A stretch of DNA of 63,949 nucleotides, counting the filler, from Octopus bimaculoides (taxonomy: Eukaryota), in the NCBI RefSeq assembly GCF_001194135.2. It is 4 parts of 4 records of this genome, joined end to end, with 100 filler letters (N's around TTAATTAATTAA, not from the genome) between each part and the next. Parts side by side here need not be neighbours in the genome. Positions count along the whole stretch, not along the records: positions 53,890 to 63,949 come from NC_069003.1; 3 more parts are not named here. One strand, given 5' to 3'. The position numbers and the translations under genes were made by a program. Under the pieces are notes generated by a model. The model was not told the DNA's origin. It saw nothing but the letters and a program-made list of their open reading frames with translations, and ran no database searches. Within the stretch, counting starts at the first letter, position 1. Each line of letters opens with the position of its first letter. Shown piece by piece: positions 2,814 through 63,949 of this stretch.

Positions 2814-3524
2814 GAGGTCAATATACAGCATGATAGATTTAAATTTAGCGTTTAAATATGGAGAAAGGAGAAATAAATTGAATGGTATAATAAATAAGCG
2901 ATCCAATTGGTCAAAACCACTTTATATCATTCCCAAATTATCAAAAATCGAACATAAATATATATTAAAATAATAGGGCATCAAATGGTAAAATCCAACC
3001 GTATAAAATATACACATATACATGAATGAAAGGTGATAAAACCTAAAAGTTTAATAGGAGTGAAGTTGAATGAAGAAAAATATATGGAATAAATTAATGC
3101 ATAAAAAGGGCGACTAAAAATTGAAGGCAATGGAGCTAAAATAATATAAATATATAAAAATCTAAGAATATAAGTATGAAAAAATAAAGTGTAAGGTAAC
3201 CAGAACAGAGTCCATTTAAGCCTATCTCTACAATTACGATCGTTTCAAAGGATGCTGTTTCACATCGTTAATGTACAATCCATTTAGGAAATGCAACGGC
3301 ATATATATTTATATATGTCCATTCTAAGTTGATATTTACAATGATGTGATTGTGGCGAACAGCACTGCCACCACATCAGTACCTTAAACATCTAAACAAA
3401 AAAACTGAAGAATGAAATCGAACACTTACGTTTCGTTTTACTCGGAGGACGTCATCATTACACATGTTTCGGCTATCGTTCCAATCCTATAATAATAATA
3501 ATGATAATAATAATAATGATAATC

Positions 3525-3570
<46 letters not shown>

Positions 3571-5018
3571 TAATAATAATGATGATGATGATGATGATTT
3601 CTTTATTAACCACAAGAGTTTACACTAAGAGAAGTATTACGGACAGCACATGACAAAACAAAGAATGTTTGTGTGTGTAGGAGTGTGTGTTGTGAGGGTT
3701 TTGCGTGAAACAAGACTAACAAAATTATCAAAAAAAAAAAAATAATAATAATAATAAAAGAATGAAAGAAATCAATAATATGTATTCTTCAATATTTACT
3801 TATTTTTGAAGTGTGTTTTGTTTTAAACTGATGACGTAAACGGACATTGCATCTTAAGAAAAGGCATTGACTCCGACGCTCTACCGATTTCGCCAAGCCA
3901 ATGCTGTGATAATAAATATAAATAAGCGATGGCCATTCCTATAATCGTTGCACAATTATAATCTTTTATAATATTTCGTTGTTTATTCGTAGAAATACAG
4001 TCTGAAGAACATTCACAAGACAAATGCATTATATTCTATTGTCGCAAAAATAAAAATGGATAACATTATAATTGCTTATTATTTTTTTAACTCTTGATAA
4101 TTACTTCAATTTTTTTTATTTTATTTCATAAAGACATGCAAAGACTTGTTTATTGAACGAAATCTCGTTCTCTCGGTAACTTGCGGCTAGGATAAGATAT
4201 GTGATTCCGTGTAGAACTGAAAATTCAGCTGCAGACGGTACTTTCAGAAATTAAGATTTGTATCACAGTCATTTAACGTAAAGCTTGTAGCTGTGTTTGG
4301 AAATTTACAACTTGGAGAATGAAACAATTTGAAGAAAAAGATTCTTTCATTTCTACTTTCCATAGATTGATTTAACCATATGCAGCAGAAAAGTTGTACA
4401 AAATATAATACACAAGTTTTATAGTGAACCTGTGTACGTAGCAAGAATAAATTGTCAGATTTTCCCAGAACAAGGTTACAGAGTTTTTGAGGATGAAGTG
4501 TCGTTGATTCCTTAACTCCGGGAAGAAGAAAAATCTAAGTTATTCTCGTTGGAATTTGAAGTACGAATGTAAAAGATGATAACTGAATATTAGAGAATTA
4601 AATGAAACTATGCGTCTATGAGGGTTTCTAGTTATAGCACAAAATTTTTTATGTTTTGAGGGGGTTTTAGGGAGGTAAATCAGCAAAGAATTCGAAGACA
4701 GATTACAAAATAAATAAATAAATAAATAATAAAAAGCATAATGAATGAGAACATTTTTATGAGATTTTATAATGATTCCAGGGTTAGAATATTTTCCAAT
4801 TGAACCTCCATCCTTTCCACCGTCTCCAGGATTGTAATTGTCCTGAGAACTGCATCTTCCTATTCTCTGTTGTTTCTGTTGCTTCCTACACTAGTCTCAT
4901 TTCTGAGCGATTCCGATTCTTTTCGGCCAAAAGTACTTCAATGACCTTTACTGCCACATGTTAAGGGGTTGCCCTACATACAACTTCGGAACTATTTGAA
5001 AGACACAGAGAGAGGGAG

Positions 5019-53889: not shown

Positions 53890-56800
53890 GTACGTAAGTA
53901 CGAACGAAAGTACATACGTACGTACGCACGAACGAACGAAAGAAGGAATGAATGAACGAACGTACGCACGTACGAACGAACGACCAAACGTACGTACGCA
54001 TTTACATAAGTAAGTACGAACGAACGAAAGTGCGTACGTACGTACAAACGAATGTACGTACGTACGAACGAAGGAACGTACCTTATGTCCGTACGTACAA
54101 ACGAACGAACGAACGTACGTCCGTATTACGAATGATCGAACCTGCGTACGTACGTGCAAACGAACGAATGGACGAACAAATGAACGATCGAACTCAGATA
54201 CGTACCTACGTACACACGATCGAACGAAAAAACGTACGAACTAACGAACGAACGTACGTGAAAATGTACGTACGAACGAACGAACGTACGTACTTACGTA
54301 AGCACGAACGTACCTTATGTCCATACGTACAAACGAACGAAGCAACATACGTCCGTATTACGAACGATCGAACCTGCGTACGTACGTGTGAACGAACGGA
54401 CGAACGAACGTAAGAACGTACTAACGAACGTAAGTACAAACGAATGAACGAGCGCACAAAACAACGTACGAACGAAAAAAACTTACGTACAAACGAACGA
54501 ACGAACGAAAGAAAAAGAAAACGAACGTACGTAGGTGCGTGTCTGAGTTCGTTCGTTCATTCGTTCGTATTTACGTACGTTCGTTTATTTGTTCGTCCGT
54601 TCGTACGTACATACGTTCGTTCGTTTGCACGTACGTACGCAGGTTCGATCGTCCGTAATACGGACGTTCGTTCGTTCGTTTGTACGTACGGACATAAGGT
54701 ACGTTCCTTCATTCGATCGTTCGTAAGTACGTTTGCACGTATGTTCGTTCGTTAGTTCGCACGTACGTACGTTCTTTCGTTCGATTGTTCGTTCGAACGT
54801 ACGTATGTATGTACATTCGTTCGTTTGTTTGTACGTACGTACGCACTTTCGTTCGTTCGTACTTACTTATGTAAATGCGTACGTACGTTTGGTCGTTCGT
54901 TCGTACGTGCGTACGTTCGTTCATTCATTCCTTCTTTCGTTCGTTCGTGCGTACGTACGTATGTACTTTCGTTCGTACTTACGTACGTACGTTCGATCAT
55001 TCGTTCGTTCGTTCGTGCGTACGTACGTATGTACTTTCGTTCGCTCGATCGTTCGTTCGTACTTACGTACCTACGTACGTTCGTTCGTTCATTCGTTAGT
55101 TTGTTCTTTCGTACGTACTTACGTTCGTTCGTTCGATTTCACGCTCGTGCGTTCGTTCTTTTGTGCACTCGTTCATTCGTTCGTTCTTTCGTTCGTATGT
55201 ACGAAAGAACGAACGAACGAATGATCGAACGACCGAACGTACGTACGTATTTACGTAAGTAAGTACGAACGAACGTAACTTATGTCCGTGTGTAAGAACG
55301 AACGAACGAAAGTGCGTACGTACGTACAAACAAACGAACGAATGTACGTACGTACGATCGATCGAACGAACGAATGAACGTACGTACGTACAAACGGAAG
55401 AACGGACGAACGAACGAAGGAACGTACCTTATGTCCGTACGTACAAACGAACGAACGAACGTACGTCCTTATTACGAACGNNNNNNNNNNNNNNNNNNNN
55501 NNNNNNNNNNNNNNNNNNNNNNNNNNNNNNNNNNNNNNNNNNNNNNNNNNNNNNNNNNNNNNNNNNNNNNNNNNNNNNNNNNNNNNNNNNNNNNNNNNNN
55601 NNNNNNNNNNNNNNNNNNNNNNNNNNNNNNNNNNNNNNNNNNNNNNNNNNNNACGAATGAACGAGTGTACAAAAGAACGAACTCACGAGCGTACAAACGA
55701 ACGAACGTACGTACGCACGAATGAACGAACGTACATACGTAAAAACGAACGAACGAAACGATGGAACGAAGGAACAAACGAACGTACGTACATACAAACG
55801 AACGAAGGAATGTACGGATGAACGAACGTACGTACTTACGTTCGTTCGTTTTTACGTAATTTTTTTCGTTTGTACGTTCTTTTGTGCGCTCGTTCGTTCG
55901 TACTTACGTCGTTCGATCATTCGTTCGTGCGTACGTTCTTTCGTTCATTCGAACGTACGTATCTTCGTTCGTTTGTACTTACGTACGTAACTACGTACGT
56001 TCTTTCGTTAGTCCGTTCGAATGTTCCTACGTACGTTCGTCCTTTCGTTCGTTCGTTCGAACGTACATACTTACGTACGTCCGTTCGTTCGTACATATGT
56101 ACGTTCTTTCGTTCGTACGTACGTACATACGCACATTCGTTTGCTTTTTCTTTCGTTCGCTCGCTCGTTTGTACCTACGTACGTAAGTTCGTTCGTTTGT
56201 ATGNNNNNNNNNNNNNNNNNNNNNNNNNNNNNNNNNNNNNNNNNNNNNNNNNNNNNNNNNNNNNNNNNNNNNNNNNNNNNNNNNNNNNNNNNNNNNNNNN
56301 NNNNNNNNNNNNNNNNNNNNNNNNNNNNNNNNNNNNNNNNNNNNNNNNNNNNNNNNNNNNNNNNNNNNNNNNNNNNNNNNNNNNNNNNNNNNNNNNNNNN
56401 NNNNNNNNNNNNNNNNNNNNNNNNNNNNNNNNNNNNNNNNNNNNNNNNNNNNNNNNNNNNNNNNNNNNNNNNNNNNNNNNNNNNNNNNNNNNNNNNNNNN
56501 NNNNNNNNNNNNNNNNNNNNNNNNNNNNNNNNNNNNNNNNNNNNNNNNNNNNNNNNNNNNNNNNNNNNNNNNNNNNNNNNNNNNNNNNNNNNNNNNNNNN
56601 NNNNNNNNNNNNNNNNNNNNNNNNNNNNNNNNNNNNNNNNNNNNNNNNNNNNNNNNNNNNNNNNNNNNNNNNNNNATCTTTCGTTCGTTCGTAAGTTCGT
56701 ACTTACGTACGTTCGTTTGTACGTACGGACATAAGGTACGTTCCTTCGTTCGTACGTACTTGTGTAAGTACGTTCGTTCGTACGTACGTTTGCACGTACG

Positions 56801-59800
56801 TTCGTTAGTTCGTACGTACGTTCTTCCGTTCGATCGTTTGTACGTACGTACGTTCATTCGTTCGTTTGTACGTACGTACGCACTTTCTTTCGGTCGTTCG
56901 TACGCACTTTCGTTCGTTCGTTCTTACGCACGGACATATGGTACGTTCGTTCGTACGTTCTTACGCACGGACATAAGGTAAGTTCGTTCTACATACTTAC
57001 GTAAATACGTTCGGTCGTTTGATCATTCGTTCGTTCGTACGTACGAGCGTGCGTTCGTTCATTCTTTCGTACATACGAACGAATGAACGAGTGCACAAAC
57101 GAACGCACGAGCGTACAAACGAACGAACGTAAGTACGTACGTACGAACGATCTAGCGAACGGACGAAAGTACATACGTACGTACGCACGCACGAACTAAC
57201 GTACGAATGTACGAAAGAACGAACGAACGAATGAACGAAGTACGCACGTACGAACGAAAGAATGTTCGAACGACCGATCGAACGAACGTACATTTTGTCC
57301 GTGCGTAAGAACGAACGAAAGTGCGTACGTACGTACAAACGAATGTACGTACGTACGAACGATCGAACGAAGTAACGTACCTTATGTCCGTACGTACAAA
57401 CGAACGAACGTCCGTATTACGAATGATCGAACCTGCGTACGTACGTGCAAACGAACGAATGGACGAACAAATGAACGATCGAACTCAGATACGTACCTAC
57501 GTACACACGATCGAACGAAAAATCGTACGAACTAACGAACGAACGTACGTGCAAATGTACGTACGAACGAACGAACGTACTTACGTAAGCACGTACCTTA
57601 TGTCCATACGTACAAACGAACGAAGGAACATACGTCCGTATTACGAACGATCGAACCTGCGTACGTACGTGTGAACTAACGTAAGTACGAACTTATGAAC
57701 GATCGAACGAACGTACTAACGAATGAACGAGCGCACAAAACAACGTACGAACGAAAAAAACTTACGTACAAACGAACGAAAGAAAAAGCAAACGAACGTA
57801 CGTACGAACATTCGAACGAACGATCTTTCGTACATACACAAGAACGTACGTACGTATGTACGAACGAACGAACAGAAGTACGTAGGAACATTCGAACGAA
57901 CGACCTTTCGTACGTACCTCCGAACGAATGAACGGACGTACGAACGACCGAACGAAAGAACGTACGTTGTTACGTACGTATGTAAGTGTGTAAGTACAAA
58001 CGAACGAAGATACGTACGAACCAACGAACGAAAGAACGAACGTACGTACGAACCAACGAACGAACTAACGCACGTACGTAGGTGCGTGTCTGAGTTCGTT
58101 CGTATTTACGTACGTTCGTTTATTTGTTCGTACGTACATACGTTCGTTCGTTTGCACGTACGTACGCAGGTTCGATCGTCCGTAATACGGACGTTCGTTC
58201 GTTTGTACGTATGGAGATAAGGTACGTTCCTTCATTCGATCGTTCGTAAGTACGTTTGCACGTATGTTAGTTCGCACGTACGTACGTTCTTTCGTTCGAT
58301 TGTTCGTTCGTTTGTACGTACGTTCATTCGTTCGTTCGAACGTACGTATGTACGTACATTCGTTCGTTTGTTTGTANNNNNNNNNNTCGTTCGTTTGTAC
58401 GTACGTTCATTCGTTCGTTCGAACGTACGTATGTACGTACATTCGTTCGTTTGTTTGTACGTACGTACGCACTTTCGTTCGTTCGTACTTACTTATGTAA
58501 ATGCGTACGTACGTTTGGTCGTTCGATCATTCGTTCGTTCGTACGTTCGTTCATTCATTCCTTCTTTAGTTCGTACGTGCGTACGTACGTATGTACTTTC
58601 GTTCGTACTTACGTACGTTCGTTCGTTCGTTCATTCGTACGTACTTACGTTCAATTGCACGCTCGTTCTTTTGTGCACTCGTTCATTCGTATGTACGAAA
58701 GAACGAACGAACGAATGATCGAACGACCGAACGTACGTATTTACGTAAGTAAGTACGAACGAACGAACGTACGTCTTTATTACGAACGATCGAACCTGCG
58801 TACGTACGTGCAAACGAACGAATTTATGTACGTACGAACGAACGGACGAACAAATGAACGAACGAACGTAAGAACGTACGAACGAAATAATGAACGTAAG
58901 TACGAACGAACGAGCGCACAAAAGAAGTACGAACGAAAAAAACTTACGTACAAACGAACGAACGTACTTACGTAAGTACGTACGAAGGTTCGAGCGTTCG
59001 TAATACGTACGTTCGCTCTTTCGTTTGTTCGTTCGTTTGTAAGTACGTACATAAGGTACGTACTTACGTAAGTTCGTATTTACTAACGTACGTTCTTTCG
59101 TACCTACGTTCGTTCGTACGTACGGACGTACGTATGTACGTTCGTAGGTGCGTATCTTCGTTCGTTTGAACTTACGTACGATCTTTCGTACCTACGTAAG
59201 TACGTCCGTTCATTTGTTAGTTCGTTCTTTCTTTCCAATGTTCCGACGTACGTTCGTTCGGTTGTTCGAAGGTACATACTTACGTTCGTTCGTACGTATC
59301 TTCGTTCGTTTGAACTTACGTACGATCTTTCGTTCGTACCTACGTAAGTACGTCCGTTCATTCGTTAGTTTGTTCTTTCGTTCGTACGTACGTACGAAAG
59401 ATCGTTCGTTCGAATGTTCCGACGTACGTTCGTTCGGTCGTTCTTTAGAAGGTACATACTTACGTAAGTATGTATGTTCATTCTTTCGTTCGTTTGTTCG
59501 TACGTTCGTTCTTTCATCCATCCGTACGCATGTACATACGTACGTTCGTAGGGAATTTCGATCGTTGTTACCTTCGAACGTTCGTTCATTTATTCGTTAT
59601 TTCATTCGTTTGTTCGGACGTACGTTCGTTCTTTCGCTCGTACATACGTTCGTTCATTTGTTCGTTCCTTCGTTCGTTTGTACTTACGTACGTACGTTCT
59701 TTCGTTCGTACGTACGTCCGTTCATTCGTTAGTTGGTTCTTTCGTTTGTTCGTACCTTCTTTTGTACGCTTGTTCATTCGTTCTTTCGTTCGTATGTACT

Positions 59801-60527
59801 TACGTGCGTTCGTCCGTAAGTTCGTACTTACGTTCGTTCGTACGTACGTACGTAGTTTTTTTCGTACGTTCGTTCGTTTCGCTCGTTCTTTCCTTCGTTC
59901 GTTCGTTTTTTCTTACGTACGTACAAACGTTCATTTGTTTATTCGTTCGTTCGTAAGTTCGTGCGAACGTACGTACGTTTGTTCGATATTTGATGTCTAC
60001 ATACATACGTACGTTAGTTCGTTCATTCATTCGTCCGTTCCTTTGTTGGTCCGTTCGTTCATTCTTTCTTTCGTTCGTTCGTACGGACATAAGGTACGTT
60101 CATTAGTTCGATCGTTCGTACGTACGTACTTAAGTAAGTACGTACGTTCGTTAGTTCGTACTTACGTTCGTTCATTCGTTTGTACGTACCTTAGGTACGT
60201 TCGTTCGTTCGTACATACATTCATTAGTTCGTTTGTACGTACGTACGCAATTTCGTTCGTTCGTTCGTTCTTTCTTTCGTTCGTACGTACGTACGTTCGT
60301 TCGTTTGTACGTACCTTCATTCGTTCGTTCGTTTGTATGTACGTACGCACTTTCGTTCGTTCGTTCTTATGTACGGACATAGGGTACGTTCGTTCGTACG
60401 TACATTCATTAGTTCGTTTGTACGTACGTACGCACTTTCGTTCGTTCGTTCGTACATACGTACGTTCGTTCGTTTGTACGTACGTTTTTTTCGTTCGTTC
60501 GTTCGTTCTTTTGTACGCTCGTTCGTA
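53890..60527. repeat. Complex CpG-rich satellite built from ACGT/AACG tetramers, with alternating orientation and higher-order repeats
   Basis: Continuous TACG/AACG/TTCG-derived sequence with recurrent landmarks (gtaccttatgtcc, gtccgtattacg, gatcgaacctgcg, gaactcagatacg) in both orientations; three internal gaps. Confidence 0.97.
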
Positions 60528-60714
60528 CCATGTGGTTGGGAAGCAAGCTTCTTACCAGACTGCCATTTTGTGTATTATAGAAGTATAAGCAATTTTATTG
60601 CAGATAAATTTTAACAAGAAAATATCATATGGATCCTAGTTGAGAACAACTGCTCAGTATGGTCACTCAGTCTGCTAGAAATAACTCATATTTCTCTCCA
60701 ATCACAGTTGACAT

Positions 60715-60942
60715 CAGTGGTTCTCAACCATCTTTTTTCCGTGGACCCCTTCAAACCCCCATTTTACTCTACTGGACCTCCACTGCTATTAACTGTATAT
60801 ATAAAAAAAATCTTACTGTGTTTTTATAATTAAATATTTTGTATATTGTAGAAGTATAAGTGATTTATTGTAGAGAAACTTCAACAACGAAATCTTATTG
60901 CTCCCACCAAGGGTCATATGGACCTCCAGTTGAGAGCCACTT
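60715..60942 (+). mobile_element. hAT Charlie-type MITE (a partial second copy lies at 60563-60652)
   Basis: TIRs CAGTGGTTCTCAAC and GTTGAGAGCCACTT. The upstream fragment shares gtagaagtataag..tttattg.aga.aa..t.aaca..aaa and ends catatgga.c..agttgagaacaactg. No matching 8-bp TSD. Confidence 0.75.
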
Positions 60943-60990
60943 ATCTAATGGTTCTGCTAATATCTCTCACTAATACCTGTTGTGTTGTAG

Positions 60991-61215
60991 GTAGCTGTAT
61001 TGATCCAAGACAATCAAAATTTGGAAGCCAAAGTTGAAGAGTTGGAGAAGAGGTTGATGGACACAAACAAATTAGAGGCGGAACTGAAGCAGTTACAACT
61101 ACGATCCGAAAAGGTGTGTCGTCGTTGTGGTAATGAAATCAAACCATGTCTACCAGCTGGAGTCCTTGGCAAAGAAGTGGAGCATGATGAACCACAGATG
61201 ACAAGTGAAGGCAAG
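60991..61215 (+). CDS. CDR2: Penultimate coding exon of a CDR2/CDR2L (cerebellar degeneration-related protein 2, centrocortin family) homolog; coiled coil
   Basis: Acceptor tgtgttgtag| at 60990 and donor aag|gtatgt at 61215/61216. The 225 nt are open in phase 0: VAVLIQDNQNLEAKVEELEKRLMDTNKLEAELKQLQ..., resembling CDR2 GLVLKENSELEQQL...ELEAEVAEMRQ as I recall it. It splices in frame to the 62405 exon. Confidence 0.8.
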
Positions 61216-61314
61216 GTATGTACATCAAGCTAAGCTTTGTCCGATGTAGTTTTCGTACAGATCTACAAGCATGAGATGTTTTGGTGATGCATATTTTCGA
61301 TTGTCTTACTCTCA

Positions 61315-61791
61315 ACATCATCATCATTCAATGTCTGTTGTCGTCCATGCTGGCATGGGCTGGACAGTTTGACTAGGGCTGGTAAGTTGAAGGGCTGCAT
61401 CAGACTCCAATCTGATTTAGCATGGTTTCTACAAGTGGATGCCAACCATTCCAAAAATGTAATGTGTACTTTTACATGCCACTGGTACAGGTGCCAGTTG
61501 CATGATACTAGTATCTACCATGACTACAATTTCACTTGGCTTGATGGGTCTTCTCAAGTATGGCATATTGCCAAAGGCCTCAGTCATTTGTCATTGCCTC
61601 CGTGAGGCCCAACGCTTGAAAGGTGCTTTTTATATGACACTGGCATTGGCTATGACTACAATTTCACTTCGCTTGACAGGTCTTCTCAAGCACAGCATAT
61701 CACCAAAGGTCTCAGTCACTAGTCATTGCATCTGTGAGGTCCAATGATTGAAGACCATGCCTCATCCCATGTCTTCCTGGGTCTACCTCTC
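61315..61791 (-). mobile_element. RTE-clade LINE 3' end with an internal ~131-bp tandem duplication
   Basis: The minus strand encodes RGRPRKTWDE (RTE C-terminal motif) and ends in an RTE-type tail (ggcatccacttgtagaaacc...ccatgccagcatgga..(gat)n). The unit atgactacaatttcactt.gcttga..ggtcttctcaag occurs at 61521 and 61652. Confidence 0.72.
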
Positions 61792-61934
61792 AGATGTTTT
61801 AATGTTCCTTTTGTTTCAATGTTTCCCCAATGCTCTCTCTTAGTTTATATGTGAGAGCATTTAATTATTATGTTGGTTCCTCTATCTGTATGTGTATATT
61901 TCTGTACATGTGTGCATGCTTGTGTCTAGTGCTA

Positions 61935-62280
61935 AAATGAACTGCTAAGTTATAGTAACATAAACAAACCAACACTGATTGTCAAGTGGTGGAAGGGATA
62001 AACACACACACACACACACACACAAAAGAGTCCAATAAAATATGTACCAAGCTTTTAAAAAGTGATGTACAGGGGTCAATACATTCGACTAAAAGTGCCC
62101 CAGTATGGCTGCAGCCTAGTGACTGAAACAAGTAAAAGGTAAAAGAATATATATTTATACATGACAGGCTTTGGTTGGCATGGGACTATAGTGGAAGACA
62201 CTTGCCCAAGGTGCATTGCAGTAGGACCGAACCTGGAACTATGTAGTTAAAAAGCAAACTTCTTATCATTCAGCCATGCC
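61935..62280 (-). mobile_element. SINE family 1 in the last CDR2 intron, with a + strand tail fragment nested at 62030-62145
   Basis: Proximal 3' body at 61935-62010, (CA)n, + strand tail (ccccagtatggctgcagcc..gactgaaacaagtaaaag), then head at 62160-62280 (gacacttgcccaaggtgc...gaacctggaactatgtagtt). Confidence 0.75.
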
Positions 62281-62404
62281 AGTATATTAGACCAATTTTC
62301 TTGTCTCGGATGCTATCAAGTTGTTTTTTGCTTTAGCAAATTCCAAACCAGTGTTCCTAAATCTAAAGATGTTATTTTGGTCTCCTTTCTCTATTTTTCT
62401 GCAG

Positions 62405-62926
62405 GTTGCACGTTTAGAGGATGGTGGCAGTGTGTATGGTAGTAATGAATCTATTCACAAAGTCCTCATGGAGACTCGGGAACAACTGTCAGGCAACGGT
62501 GTACAGTCTAATGTCTCCATTCTCAGTGAGCTCGAGTCACAGTACTACGCTCTATGTCAAAAATACGAGTCTCTCCTGCAGCACAAATTGCGGAGACCTC
62601 GATCAGGTACAGACTTTGATGAAGATGAAGCCGACAGGAATTTCCGTGTTTCGCACAAGGAAGTGCAGACCCTCCTTGTAAACCTGCATCGCTGTGTCGA
62701 GGTGAATACAGACGTTGGAGACTCCACGACAAGCCCACCACCGTATCGGTCCCTTTTCAAAGACATCTTTGCTACCCTGCGCAAATCTCGAATCGAAGAG
62801 TCTCCAGAACAGCAACCGGCCCCCACTGCAAATCAGGGCTCACAGCAATCAAAATCAGCCACTGGTACACCGATAACCACTCCTATAACAGAAGATAGTC
62901 CAATGACAAAGAGTGCTCATGCATGA
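62405..62926 (+). CDS. CDR2: Last coding exon of the CDR2/CDR2L homolog
   Basis: Acceptor ctatttttctgcag| at 62404 (phase 0) and stop TGA at 62924-62926. Three motifs match human CDR2 in order (human sequence from memory): SILSELESQYYALCQKYESLL (SLLHEVDTQYSALKVKYEELL), SHKEVQT (SHKAVQT) and PPPYRSLFKDIFATLRKS (PPEYKALFKEIFSCIKKT). Confidence 0.87.
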   Translation, partial: VARLEDGGSVYGSNESIHKVLMETREQLSGNGVQSNVSILSELESQYYALCQKYESLLQHKLRRPRSGTDFDEDEADRNFRVSHKEVQTLLVNLHRCVEVNTDVGDSTTSPPPYRSLFKDIFATLRKSRIEESPEQQPAPTANQGSQQSKSATGTPITTPITEDSPMTKSAHA

Positions 62927-63549
62927 AAATATATCGAGAAATAGAAAACCAATTAAAAACTGCTCAATATTTTATTTTATGTTATTTTCCTTGCAGCAGC
63001 CTACAAACCATGATGGAATAGTTCTTTGTTAACGTCATGTTTGTAAAATCCGATTTTGTACAGTCCGATGATGATCTTCATCAACAGGTGTCGTATTAAA
63101 GAGCAATGAAATTGTTTTAAATGTAATATTTTAGACAACAGATGATAAGGCTTAATATTTCATCGATATCGATAAACTTGTCTAATTAGTTTAAATGTTT
63201 TAAACCACAGAGTCTTGTTGACCCTCAGGTAAACGGATGAGGTTCATGGCATGCACGTGCATTATAGGTGATGCCTTTCACACACACAACTTAATGTTAT
63301 TTCTATAGTCTTAATTTGGTTTACACATTTCCTTTGTCTTCTCAAAACACAACTCCACTCTTAAATTTCAATGGTGTCCAGTGATTTTACACAATATTTT
63401 TACTCAACTCCTTTCTTGGCATATGTGTGTGTTTGCATGTATTTTGCTTTTTGTTCTACAAAACAAAGAATGTGTGCTCAATATATACTTGCATAAGAGG
63501 TGTTTATACAGACGTCTTCATCTGTTCTCTTTCTGGTCCAACGACCCTC

Positions 63550-63843
63550 CATGTTTGTTTTCATTCGGTTTCTTTCAATGTCTCCACTGTCCTGTTTTTT
63601 TGTTTCCAACTTTGACCCTCCAGAAATCCCAAATTTTATTTTGGAATTTATGGGAGCAACTGTCTTCGAAATCTCATATTGTCGTTGAATGCTCGAAATG
63701 AGGAGTAGATGGACAGCTGACAACTGATGAAGGGTCGTTCTGTGTTTACTTGTCCTGTTTTCCATTTTTATCTCTTGTTGTCTGCGTATTTGACTCATTT
63801 GTTTTCGTACTTCATGTTGTTTACAGTTGGTGACGTCCTGTAA
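63550..63843 (+). repeat. Dispersed repeat of the same family as 531-795
   Basis: Direct alignment to the reverse complement of 531-795; flanked by a (TA)n microsatellite like the other copy. Confidence 0.85.
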
Positions 63844-63882
63844 CGATATAAGCATATATTTATATATATATATGTATATATA

Positions 63883-63913
<31 letters not shown>

Positions 63914-63949
63914 TTATTTATATATATATATATATTTATTTATTTATAT

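What the first reader, a model, noticed from the sequence alone, without database searches (positions are those of the whole stretch)
53890..60527. 6.6-kb fold-back satellite with palindromes at three scales beside a CDR2 exon
Seen: (1) the basic tetramers are self-complementary (ACGT, TACGTA); (2) the array alternates between AACG-strand and TTCG-strand blocks, flipping near 54530, 55200, 55835, 57070, 58075, 58690 and 58985, often with a local hairpin at the flip; (3) the flip junctions themselves are repeated. gtacgtaggtgcgtgtctgagttcg occurs at 54527 and 58075, cgtatgtacgaaagaacg at 55196 and 58689, and its reverse complement at about 57070. About 53.9-55.3 kb is therefore directly repeated at about 57.3-58.8 kb (offset 3.3-3.6 kb), with an inverted copy in between. 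Inference: amplification by repeated fold-back or template switching rather than simple slippage, giving a cruciform- and Z-DNA-prone, extremely CpG-dense domain in an AT-rich genome. I know of no description of this satellite.
Basis: partly seen in the sequence, partly recalled or inferred. Interest (0 to 1): 0.75.

Follow-up and report, generated by a model that had tools for sequence, protein, structure and literature searches.

The report
Mirror-patterned CpG-rich satellite in an intron
A 6.6-kb non-coding repeat array inside a mollusc CDR2-like gene is built from 4-base CpG units in blocks that alternate between the two strands; this arrangement is unusual but of a known kind, and no sequencing reads were available to confirm it.

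Summary
Places 53890-60527 are a complex satellite in strict 4-base register, (WWCG)n. WW is AA, TA or TT, and CpG is 3.3 times the expected frequency, against 0.47 in the flank. Eight blocks of 0.3-1.5 kb alternate in strand. 460 of 470 asymmetric units agree with their block. The seven flips lie inside contiguous sequence, not at the N gaps. Both junction types recur in diverged copies. A block of about 1.3 kb (54018-55275) recurs at +3.3 to +3.6 kb, with inverted homologous material in between. Unit-permuted controls give no long inverted matches, against 23 observed.

Best reading: a neutral intronic satellite that grew in three ways. Tetramers slipped, inverted duplications arose at GTAC/TACG microhomology, and a compound unit of about 3.5 kb was duplicated in tandem. 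Fold-back priming and ordinary inversion cannot be told apart here.

Caveats:
- The 10-N gap is flanked by an exact 73-bp overlap, which is an assembly artefact.
- The first 160 bp are a 100% inverted copy of 54827-54986.
- Two other gaps cannot be bridged.
- Copy number in the genome is unknown.

No matching description was found in the paper library. Interest is moderate.

The parts
53890..60527 (.). Whole (WWCG)n complex satellite array. It is cut on the left by the edge of the piece, so it is at least 6.6 kb long.
   Evidence: 4-mer census and CpG o/e 3.26; CpG spacing a multiple of 4 in 95.6% of cases; TRF periods 4, 12, 24, 28, 72, 80, 144 and 232
53890..54526 (+). Block B1, AACG strand: arm A of module M0 (to 54213) plus spacer S (54214-54526)
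   Evidence: 49 of 49 asymmetric units are A-type; landmark order L7 L6 L4 L7 L1 L2 L3 | L1 L2 L5
54527..55197 (-). Block B2, CGTT strand: arm A' of M0, with the landmarks of arm A in mirrored order
   Evidence: 53 of 54 units are T-type; order L3- L2- L1- L7- L4- L6-; 54616-54715 ~ rc 54065-54168 at 93%
55198..55835 (+). Block B3, AACG strand; contains the 172-N gap
   Evidence: 43 of 43 units are A-type; 55363-55478 ~ 54017-54132 at 92%
55836..57069 (-). Block B4, CGTT strand; contains the 472-N gap
   Evidence: 60 of 62 units are T-type; 56710-56853 ~ rc 54200-54339 at 85%
57070..58073 (+). Block B5, AACG strand: arm A (57072-57504) plus spacer S (57505-58073) of module M2. It is a direct copy of B1.
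   Evidence: 54018-54501 ~ 57309-57780 at 91.5%; same landmark order as B1
58074..58689 (-). Block B6, CGTT strand: arm A' of M2, a direct copy of B2
   Evidence: 54560-54795 ~ 58095-58310 and 54787-55008 ~ 58413-58638
58690..58985 (+). Block B7, AACG strand; its start is a direct copy of the start of B3
   Evidence: 55192-55275 ~ 58686-58765 at 95%; 25 of 25 units are A-type
58986..60527 (-). Block B8, CGTT strand, running to the right edge of the array
   Evidence: 113 of 117 units are T-type; 56809-56922 ~ 60276-60474 direct at 87-90%, which keeps the period of about 3.5 kb
54527..54551 (+). Junction J1 (+ to -), copy 1. It is the reverse complement of landmark L3 (54189-54213) and joins at a shared GTAC.
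   Evidence: Exact 25-mer here and at 58074; reverse complement with 2 mismatches at 54189 and 57480
58074..58098 (+). Junction J1, copy 2
55169..55228 (.). Junction J2 (- to +), copy 1: local palindrome with 29-base arms, 26 pairs and a 2-base loop
   Evidence: DNA fold -24 kcal/mol, z -5.4
57056..57087 (.). Junction J2, the inverted copy
   Evidence: Reverse complement of the 18-mer with 1 mismatch at 57060-57077; 32-base J2 landmark with 2 mismatches at 57056-57087; fold z -3.8
58678..58709 (.). Junction J2, copy 3 (direct)
   Evidence: Exact 18-mer at 58688
58304..58459 (.). Exact 73-bp duplicate on either side of the 10-N gap: probably unmerged contig ends and not real sequence
   Evidence: The last 73 bases left of the gap equal the first 73 bases right of it
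53890..54049 (.). First 160 bp of the piece, a 100% identical inverted copy of 54827-54986; its placement is doubtful
   Evidence: (160/160), while the neighbouring arm segment is 93%
55481..55652 (.). Assembly gap of 172 N; A-type sequence on both sides; cannot be bridged from paralogous copies
   Evidence: By the matches the left flank maps to about 57423 of M2. By eye, not aligned, the right flank resembles about 57075. That order is not collinear.
56204..56675 (.). Assembly gap of 472 N; T-type sequence on both sides; cannot be bridged
60527..60566 (+). Truncated tail of a SINE-like element, directly next to the array
   Evidence: 31/40 identity to 62238-62277; 0 of 500 shuffles score as high
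60991..61215 (+). Exon of a CDR2-like gene, downstream of the array
   Evidence: Translation; 42% identity to residues 139-352 of P0001, whose cluster holds a chiton 'cerebellar degeneration-related protein 2-like'
62405..62926 (+). Last coding exon of the CDR2-like gene, stop codon at 62924-62926

Best explanation
This is a real, non-coding complex satellite lying in an intron of a mollusc CDR2-like gene. Its base layer is a 4-base register, WWCG. The unit TACG is its own reverse complement. AACG and TTCG are each other's complement, so they mark the strand.

On that layer sit higher-order units of about 230-640 bp with recognisable landmarks. These units occur in eight blocks that alternate in orientation. 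The map reads A-S-A' | J2 | B-S'-B' | J2(rc) | A-S-A' | J2 | B..., which is about 1.9 copies of a compound unit of about 3.5 kb.

Three processes most likely built it:
(a) Slippage in steps of one tetramer. This is shown by the indel lengths.
(b) Inverted duplication, in which a 3' end pairs with a short self-complementary GTAC/TACG tract on its own or the sister strand and copies backwards. This is inferred from the anatomy of J1 and from the kept register.
(c) One tandem duplication of the compound unit. This is shown by the direct repeat.

I take the array to be a neutral by-product of replication errors with no coded function. As single-stranded DNA, or as pre-mRNA, it would fold into very long hairpins.
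For: Register and composition.

Block purity: 27 transitions against 229 +/- 11.

Mirrored landmark order U+ ... U- ... U+. Long direct and inverted matches are absent from 40 unit-permuted controls.

The flips are not at the gaps. Self-complementary tracts are 14 bp at most, shorter than any assembler word. Each junction type occurs in two or three copies whose flanks have diverged.

J1 is the reverse complement of L3, joined at a shared GTAC, with a loop of 313 bp in M0 and 569 bp in M2 (read).

The CpG register is kept across 6 of 7 flips. 57 of 80 indels are multiples of 4.

Intron position: the two exons match residues 139-352 of a 401-residue homologue, so at least 138 residues of upstream exons are missing.

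Hairpin potential: DNA -470 kcal/mol for 53890-54986. RNA -325 against -201 +/- 5 kcal/mol, z -25.9, for 54065-54715.

Background from the literature: in Octopus bimaculoides fewer than 10% of CpGs are methylated and repeats are largely unmethylated, satellites somewhat more (PMC9476566). That would let a CpG-dense repeat persist, if this genome is an octopus. The octopus origin is not shown by any tool here.
Against: - No reads and no second assembly could be consulted, so the order and number of blocks rest on one gapped scaffold.
- One gap is flanked by an artefactual 73-bp duplicate.
- The first 160 bp are a 100% inverted copy of an internal stretch. The arms of M0 are 97.5% alike and those of M2 only 88.5%. 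An assembler borrowing sequence from the other arm could produce this.
- With lenient gap scoring, any two parts of the array reach 83-86% identity, so the weaker homologies (M1, M3) are only modestly above background.
- Fold-back priming and two-break inversion within a higher-order array predict the same map.
- Beyond about 30 bp the arms around J2 are only about 70% alike in a stricter alignment.
Confidence: 0.6

Rival explanations
1. The long-range pattern is partly an assembly artefact. The flip junctions exist in the genome, but local read-walking or gap closing in a repeat wandered between paralogous copies or strands. Alternatively, two haplotypes were laid in tandem. Either way the number and order of blocks and the 3.5-kb duplication are not real.
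For: Three N gaps. An exact 73-bp duplicate around the 10-N gap. A 160-bp 100% inverted copy exactly at the start of the piece. Arm identity is uneven between M0 and M2. The piece ends in repeats on both sides, as a small unplaced scaffold would.
Against: All seven flips lie inside contiguous sequence, and the strand type is the same on both sides of every gap. Palindromic tracts are 14 bp at most, so a word-graph cannot flip strand there without reads that carry the junction. The copies differ by 4-9% plus many indels. This is too much for re-use of the same reads, and high for alleles.
Confidence: 0.2
2. The same map arose by ordinary two-break inversions inside a one-way higher-order repeat array. 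These could come from recombination or end-joining between units that happened to lie inverted. One tandem duplication followed, with no fold-back priming.
For: In an array whose higher-order unit is about 640 bp, inverting one unit also gives mirrored landmarks. The arms of M2 (88.5%) are no more alike than neighbouring direct units at 85-90%. J2 is a good palindrome for only about 29 bp.
Against: J1 joins precisely at a shared self-complementary GTAC, with the geometry of a primed hairpin. The register is kept at 6 of 7 flips, which random breakpoints would do one time in four. The arms of M0 are 97.5% alike, above the level of direct units.
Confidence: 0.3
3. The modules are copies of a Foldback-type mobile element, or the cargo of another transposon. 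Such elements have long inverted terminal repeats made of short tandem repeats. Here the copies would have inserted next to or into each other.
For: Each module has inverted arms built from tandem subrepeats around a spacer. The right edge of the array cuts a SINE-like element abruptly, as an insertion would.
Against: There is no non-satellite DNA between modules and no transposase-like reading frame. All long frames are translations of the repeat. Searches with them found only microsatellite translations. No target-site duplication can be sought because the left end is missing. Dispersed copies could not be tested.
Confidence: 0.1
4. The array has a function. It could be a CpG-island-like regulatory or chromatin domain of the gene. 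Or it could be a source of long intronic double-stranded RNA that is edited by ADAR or cut into small RNAs.
For: CpG o/e is 3.26 inside a CpG-poor gene. It lies on the sense strand of an intron. The predicted RNA hairpin is very strong, z -25.9.
Against: There is no evidence of transcription, editing, small RNAs, methylation or conservation, and none could be tested. The copies drift by indels and CpG decay: 227 TG/CA units among 1379.
Confidence: 0.1

Closest known systems
Higher-order-repeat satellites with strand inversions (for example human HSat2/3 and alpha-satellite arrays in complete assemblies); cited from general knowledge, not tested here
   Same: Short asymmetric units ((GAATG)n in HSat2/3, AACG here), higher-order units on top of them, and large blocks that switch strand inside one array.
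   Different: This array is only 6.6 kb or more and lies in an intron. Its flips are every 0.3-1.5 kb. Its neutral unit (TACG) is self-complementary, so flips keep the 4-base CpG register. It is very CpG-dense.
Palindromic amplification by fold-back priming at short inverted repeats, and breakage-fusion-bridge ladders; cited from general knowledge
   Same: Head-to-head and tail-to-tail copies, junctions at short self-complementary microhomology, and spacers (loops) between arms.
   Different: Those cases involve large genic amplicons in cancer, yeast or ciliates. Here the scale is hundreds of bases inside a satellite. The arms have diverged by 3-12%, and a direct tandem duplication is superimposed.
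Foldback (FB) transposons of Drosophila and similar elements
   Same: Long inverted arms built from short tandem repeats around a central region.
   Different: No defined termini, target-site duplication, dispersed copies or coding part could be shown. The modules abut one another without host DNA between them.
Ordinary (AACG)n and (TACG)n microsatellites
   Same: The same tetramers. Such tracts are common in eukaryote-like metagenome contigs and in predicted 'proteins'.
   Different: In the 120 loci sampled they are 180 bp or shorter, one-way and of one unit type. Here the array is several kb of mixed units with landmarks, higher-order periods and seven flips. The longest perfect run is only 7 units.

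Membership tests
Satellite DNA with higher-order repeats | Head-to-tail repetition of a short unit over kilobases | tested here: met
   Period 4 throughout; CpG autocorrelation about 4-fold at every multiple of 4 out to lag 40; TRF arrays
Satellite DNA with higher-order repeats | Longer periods made of diverged short units | tested here: met
   TRF periods 232 (81%), 144 (78%), 80, 72 and 37; recurring landmarks in fixed order
Satellite DNA with higher-order repeats | Many copies or long arrays in the genome, typically heterochromatic | not testable with these tools
   No genome or reads of the source were reachable. Landmark scan of metagenome contigs: 0 hits.
Simple microsatellite | Long, nearly perfect runs of one 1-6-base unit | tested here: not met
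   Longest perfect (WWCG) run is 7 units; TRF period-4 match is only 63-71%
Fold-back (inverted) duplication | Two arms in inverted orientation that are copies of each other | tested here: met
   Arms A/A' are 97.5% alike (M0) and 88.5% alike (M2) over aligned bases. BLAST inverted matches reach 164 bp; none in the controls.
Fold-back (inverted) duplication | Junction at short self-complementary microhomology, with a spacer equal to the hairpin loop | tested here: met
   J1 begins with GTAC, shared with the end of L3; loop 54214-54526 or 57505-58073 (sequence)
Fold-back (inverted) duplication | The event adds length (a duplication) rather than only turning a segment | tested here: inconclusive
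   In a higher-order array an inversion gives the same mirrored landmarks. There is no outgroup or intermediate.
Foldback-type transposon | Defined termini with a target-site duplication | not testable with these tools
   The left end lies beyond the piece. The right end abuts a cut SINE-like tail.
Foldback-type transposon | Dispersed copies at unrelated sites | not testable with these tools
   No access to the source genome
CpG island | GC of at least 0.5 and CpG o/e of at least 0.6 over 200 bp or more (the usual vertebrate rule) | tested here: not met
   o/e is 3.26 but GC is only 0.44. The CpG density comes from the repeat unit. Methylation state was not tested.
CDR2 / CDR2-like protein (flanking gene) | Sequence similarity to annotated family members | tested here: met
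   E 5e-37 and 42% identity over 226 residues to P0001. Its 90% cluster holds XP_064613841, 'cerebellar degeneration-related protein 2-like', from Liolophura sinensis. The local Pfam copy gave no hit for the fragment.

The most novel reading that the evidence does not exclude
The array lies on the sense strand of an intron and its arms pair over hundreds of bases. Every transcript of the gene would therefore carry a very long near-perfect RNA hairpin. In a coleoid cephalopod, a group with exceptionally heavy A-to-I editing, such an intronic fold-back satellite could be a strong ADAR substrate or sink. It could also be a source of endogenous small RNAs that affects splicing or dosage of the CDR2-like gene. 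If the same satellite family is dispersed in introns, it would play the role that inverted Alu pairs play in primates.
Probability: 0.1. Interest if true: 0.75.

Novelty: new member of a known kind. Interest (0 to 1): 0.4.

Why it matters
If long reads confirm it, the locus is a compact case of a satellite growing by strand-switching as well as by slippage. All junctions are readable, and the 4-base register acts as a built-in ruler for each event. It also shows that a repeat with CpG at 3.3 times expectation can persist inside a CpG-depleted gene. This bears on how methylation treats repeats in molluscs. Repeat pipelines would probably mask it as '(ACGT)n/(CGTT)n simple repeat' (not tested here) and miss the higher-order mirrored structure. 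The predicted intronic double-stranded RNA gives a concrete, testable link to RNA editing.

Tried and rejected
- Independent assemblies through the flanking gene. The best protein hits are only 42-44% identical, so the source genome and its close relatives are not in the protein collection. No orthologous locus could be fetched.
- Satellite reading frames as protein probes. The word-indexed search found nothing. The exhaustive search gave 1271 hits, and the 13 best read were low-complexity proteins or translations of ordinary one-way microsatellites. Among the 150 best hits listed, only P0026 mixes FVR and YVR motifs as this array does. Its contig L121 carries a 330-bp one-way (TTCGTACG)n in a GC-rich eukaryote-like contig.
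- Metagenome contigs. Landmark 24-mer: 0 hits. Generic (WWCG)7: at least 120 loci, all short single-unit microsatellites.
- Literature. No paper holds any of ten 14- to 18-mers from the array or the SINE-like tail. No cephalopod satellite description was found.
- Rfam and tRNA scans of the piece: nothing. PDB: nothing for the homologue.
- Rejected: the idea that the flips are only AA-to-TT unit drift in a (WWCG)n tract. Complex landmarks recur in mirrored order, and the controls give no such matches.
- Rejected: each flip as the centre of a long perfect palindrome. Beyond about 30 bp the arms around J2 are about 70% alike. The true inverted arms are offset by spacers.
Full report
SCOPE. Only places 53890-63949 are genome. 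The array occupies 53890-60527 and is cut by the left edge of the piece. The right end of the piece is an AT microsatellite.

BASE LAYER. The twelve commonest 4-mers are the rotations of GTAC (5.3-5.5% each), of TTCG (4.3-4.6%) and of AACG (3.1-3.3%). Successive CpGs are 4, 8, 12... bases apart in 95.6% of cases. The CpG autocorrelation is about 4-fold at every multiple of 4 out to lag 40, and close to zero at small lags between them.

Read in register, the array is (WWCG)n. Of 1379 in-register units, 893 keep CG, and their WW is TA (292), TT (272) or AA (198). Among decayed units, TG plus CA (227) is the largest class, then CT plus AG (162). TACG is its own reverse complement. AACG and TTCG (read as CGTT) are complements, so only they mark the strand.

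It is not a microsatellite. The longest perfect run is 7 units and the longest (TACG)n tract is 14 bp. CpG o/e is 3.26 at GC 0.44. The flank has o/e 0.47 at GC 0.38.

BLOCKS AND FLIPS. AT skew and unit counts give eight blocks:
- + 53890-54526
- - 54527-55197
- + 55198-55835
- - 55836-57069
- + 57070-58073
- - 58074-58689
- + 58690-58985
- - 58986-60527
460 of 470 asymmetric units agree with their block. There are 27 type changes, against 229 +/- 11 when the order is shuffled. The CpG register is unbroken within 48 bp on either side of six of the seven flips.

GAPS, TESTED FIRST AS ASKED. None of the three N runs coincides with a flip, and the strand type is the same on both sides of each.

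The 10-N gap is flanked by an exact 73-bp overlap, 58304-58376 = 58387-58459. The paralogous copy at 54787-54866 shows no such duplication. I read this as unmerged contig ends, a false duplication of about 83 bp.

The 172-N and 472-N gaps cannot be bridged. By the matches, the left flank of the first maps to about 57423 of the second copy. By eye, its right flank resembles about 57075. That order is not collinear. The left flank of the second gap has no long match anywhere.

HIGHER-ORDER STRUCTURE. TRF finds periods of 232 (81% match), 144, 80, 72 and 37 bp. Self-BLAST finds 18 direct and 23 inverted matches of 80 bp or more. Permuting 4-mers or 12-mers inside each block gives no inverted match in 40 trials. 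The matches therefore do not follow from the self-complementary unit.

Eight landmarks occur in fixed order. I call the stretch L6 L4 L7 L1 L2 L3 unit U. The map runs as follows:
- U+, then a spacer (L1 L2 L5)
- U- in mirrored order (L3- L2- L1- L7- L4- L6-)
- junction J2
- U+ again, then a diverged stretch with both large gaps
- J2 in reverse orientation
- the same U+ spacer U- J2 U+ once more

I call the stretches between J2 centres modules. They measure at least 1306, 1874, 1619 and 1838 bp, and each is '+ then -'.

Direct matches link 54018-55275 to 57309-58765 at 91-95% identity, with offsets of 3291-3626. They also link 56809-56922 to 60276-60474 at 87-90%. The array is therefore about 1.9 copies of a compound unit of about 3.5 kb.

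With lenient gap scoring, inverted homology runs through the J2 centres: 54527-55480 against rc 56686-57504, 91.8% of aligned bases. Unrelated parts of the array reach 83-86% under the same scoring, so I give this little weight.

JUNCTIONS. J1 (+ to -) is an exact 25-mer at 54527 and 58074. It is the reverse complement, with two transitions, of landmark L3 at 54189 and 57480. Read, the + strand runs ...GAACGTAC and then continues as the complement of what lies left of the GTAC at 54210-54213. A 3' end that folded back on that GTAC and copied its own strand would produce exactly this. The loop would be 313 bp (M0) or 569 bp (M2). The extra bases in M2 are an indel flanked by the repeat GTACGTA.

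J2 (- to +) is exact at 55194 and 58688, and inverted with 1 mismatch at 57060. It is a local palindrome with 29-base arms, 26 pairs and a 2-base loop. Its DNA folds have z -5.4, -3.8 and -2.0. Beyond about 30 bp its arms are only about 70% alike.

Both junction types recur with diverged flanks. They were therefore formed once and then copied. They are not random chimeras.

HOW IT GREW. Shown:
- Indels between copies are multiples of 4 in 57 of 80 cases, against 25% by chance. This is tetramer slippage.
- There is a tandem duplication of about 3.5 kb.

Inferred: inverted duplications by template switching at GTAC/TACG microhomology. The anatomy of J1 and the kept register support this. Two inversions inside a higher-order array would give the same map, and I cannot separate the two.

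One thing is unexplained. The arms of M0 are 97.5% alike and those of M2 88.5%. The outer 160 bp of M0 (53890-54049) are 100% identical to rc 54827-54986. This could be gene conversion between arms, or the assembler borrowing the other arm at a scaffold end.

ARTEFACT OR NOT. A strand flip inside a contig needs reads that carry the junction. Palindromic tracts of 14 bp or less cannot mislead a word graph. I therefore take the junctions to be real. The number and order of blocks are unverified.

SURROUNDINGS. The array ends at 60527 against the tail of a SINE-like element. 60527-60566 matches 62238-62277 at 31/40, and 0 of 500 shuffles score as high. The fuller copy has at least 78 more bases on its 5' side. 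From memory this resembles the common octopus SINE; that is a lead only.

Exons at 60991-61215 and 62405-62926 align to residues 139-352 of P0001. Its cluster holds a chiton 'cerebellar degeneration-related protein 2-like'. Upstream exons must lie beyond the array, which makes the array intronic and on the sense strand.

The species is not established by any tool. The only tool evidence on origin is that the best-matching, and only named, relative of the flanking gene is a chiton protein. That points to a mollusc but does not prove it.

PHYSICAL PROPERTIES (COMPUTED ONLY). 53890-54986 folds as one hairpin of -470 kcal/mol as DNA. 54065-54715 folds at -325 kcal/mol as RNA, against -201 +/- 5 for shuffles, z -25.9. 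Alternating purine-pyrimidine tracts of 12 bp or more cover 1038 of 5984 bases, against 81 of 3326 in the flank; the longest is 25 bp. Whether cruciforms or Z-DNA form in vivo is not shown.

COMPARISON AND NOVELTY. (AACG)n and (TACG)n microsatellites are common. In the 120 metagenome loci sampled they are 180 bp or shorter, one-way and of one unit type. Protein-space hits to the repeat's reading frames are of the same sort.

Satellites with strand inversions and palindromic amplification are known kinds. This is a new member. Its particular feature is that the self-complementary neutral unit lets flips keep the register. No description was found in the paper library.

In O. bimaculoides repeats are largely unmethylated and satellites somewhat more methylated (PMC9476566). 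If this genome is an octopus, that would explain how such CpG density survives.

VERDICT. The array is a new member of a known kind. Interest is 0.4, held down by the missing read validation, the single locus and the lack of any sign of function.

Noticed in passing
window 60527-60566 and 62160-62285: The array's right edge cuts into the tail of a SINE-like element. A fuller copy lies in the next intron. The missing 5' half might sit at the unseen left edge of the array, which would show that the array arose by insertion or expansion inside a SINE.
   Followed up: partly
window 58304-58376 and 58387-58459: Exact 73-bp duplicate on either side of the 10-N gap: very likely unmerged contig ends, so about 83 bp here are not real.
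   Followed up: yes
window 53890-54049 vs 54827-54986: A 160-bp inverted copy at 100% identity, exactly at the start of the piece. Neighbouring arm segments are 93%, and the arms of the second copy are 88.5% alike. Either gene conversion or assembly borrowing; unexplained.
   Followed up: partly
window 61489-61752: Two tandem 132-bp copies (79% alike) in the intron, next to a SINE-like head at about 61300-61480.
   Followed up: no
window 60565-60595 and 60836-60866: A direct repeat 271 bp apart (87%) between the array and the exon. By eye it extends further if gaps are allowed.
   Followed up: no
window 62002-62024 and 63854-63949: (AC)11.5 in the intron. An AT-rich microsatellite runs to the very end of the piece. 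With the satellite at the other end, this suggests the piece is a whole small scaffold broken at repeats.
   Followed up: no
window 62735-62790: The motif YRSLFKDIFATLRKSRIEE near the C-terminus of the CDR2-like protein is almost unchanged in the chiton-cluster homologue (YKALFKDIFATLKKSQIEE), while the surrounding sequence is only about 40% identical.
   Followed up: no
L121 1175-1500 and 2461-2499: A metagenome contig of eukaryotic appearance with a 330-bp one-way (TTCGTACG)n tract read as part of a called gene. It ends in CCCTAA repeats like a telomere.
   Followed up: no
window 57781-58073: The spacer of the second copy is about 277 bp longer than that of the first. The extra stretch includes an 80-bp tandem repeat (57791-57966) and is bounded by the short repeat GTACGTA, as a microhomology-mediated indel would be.
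   Followed up: partly
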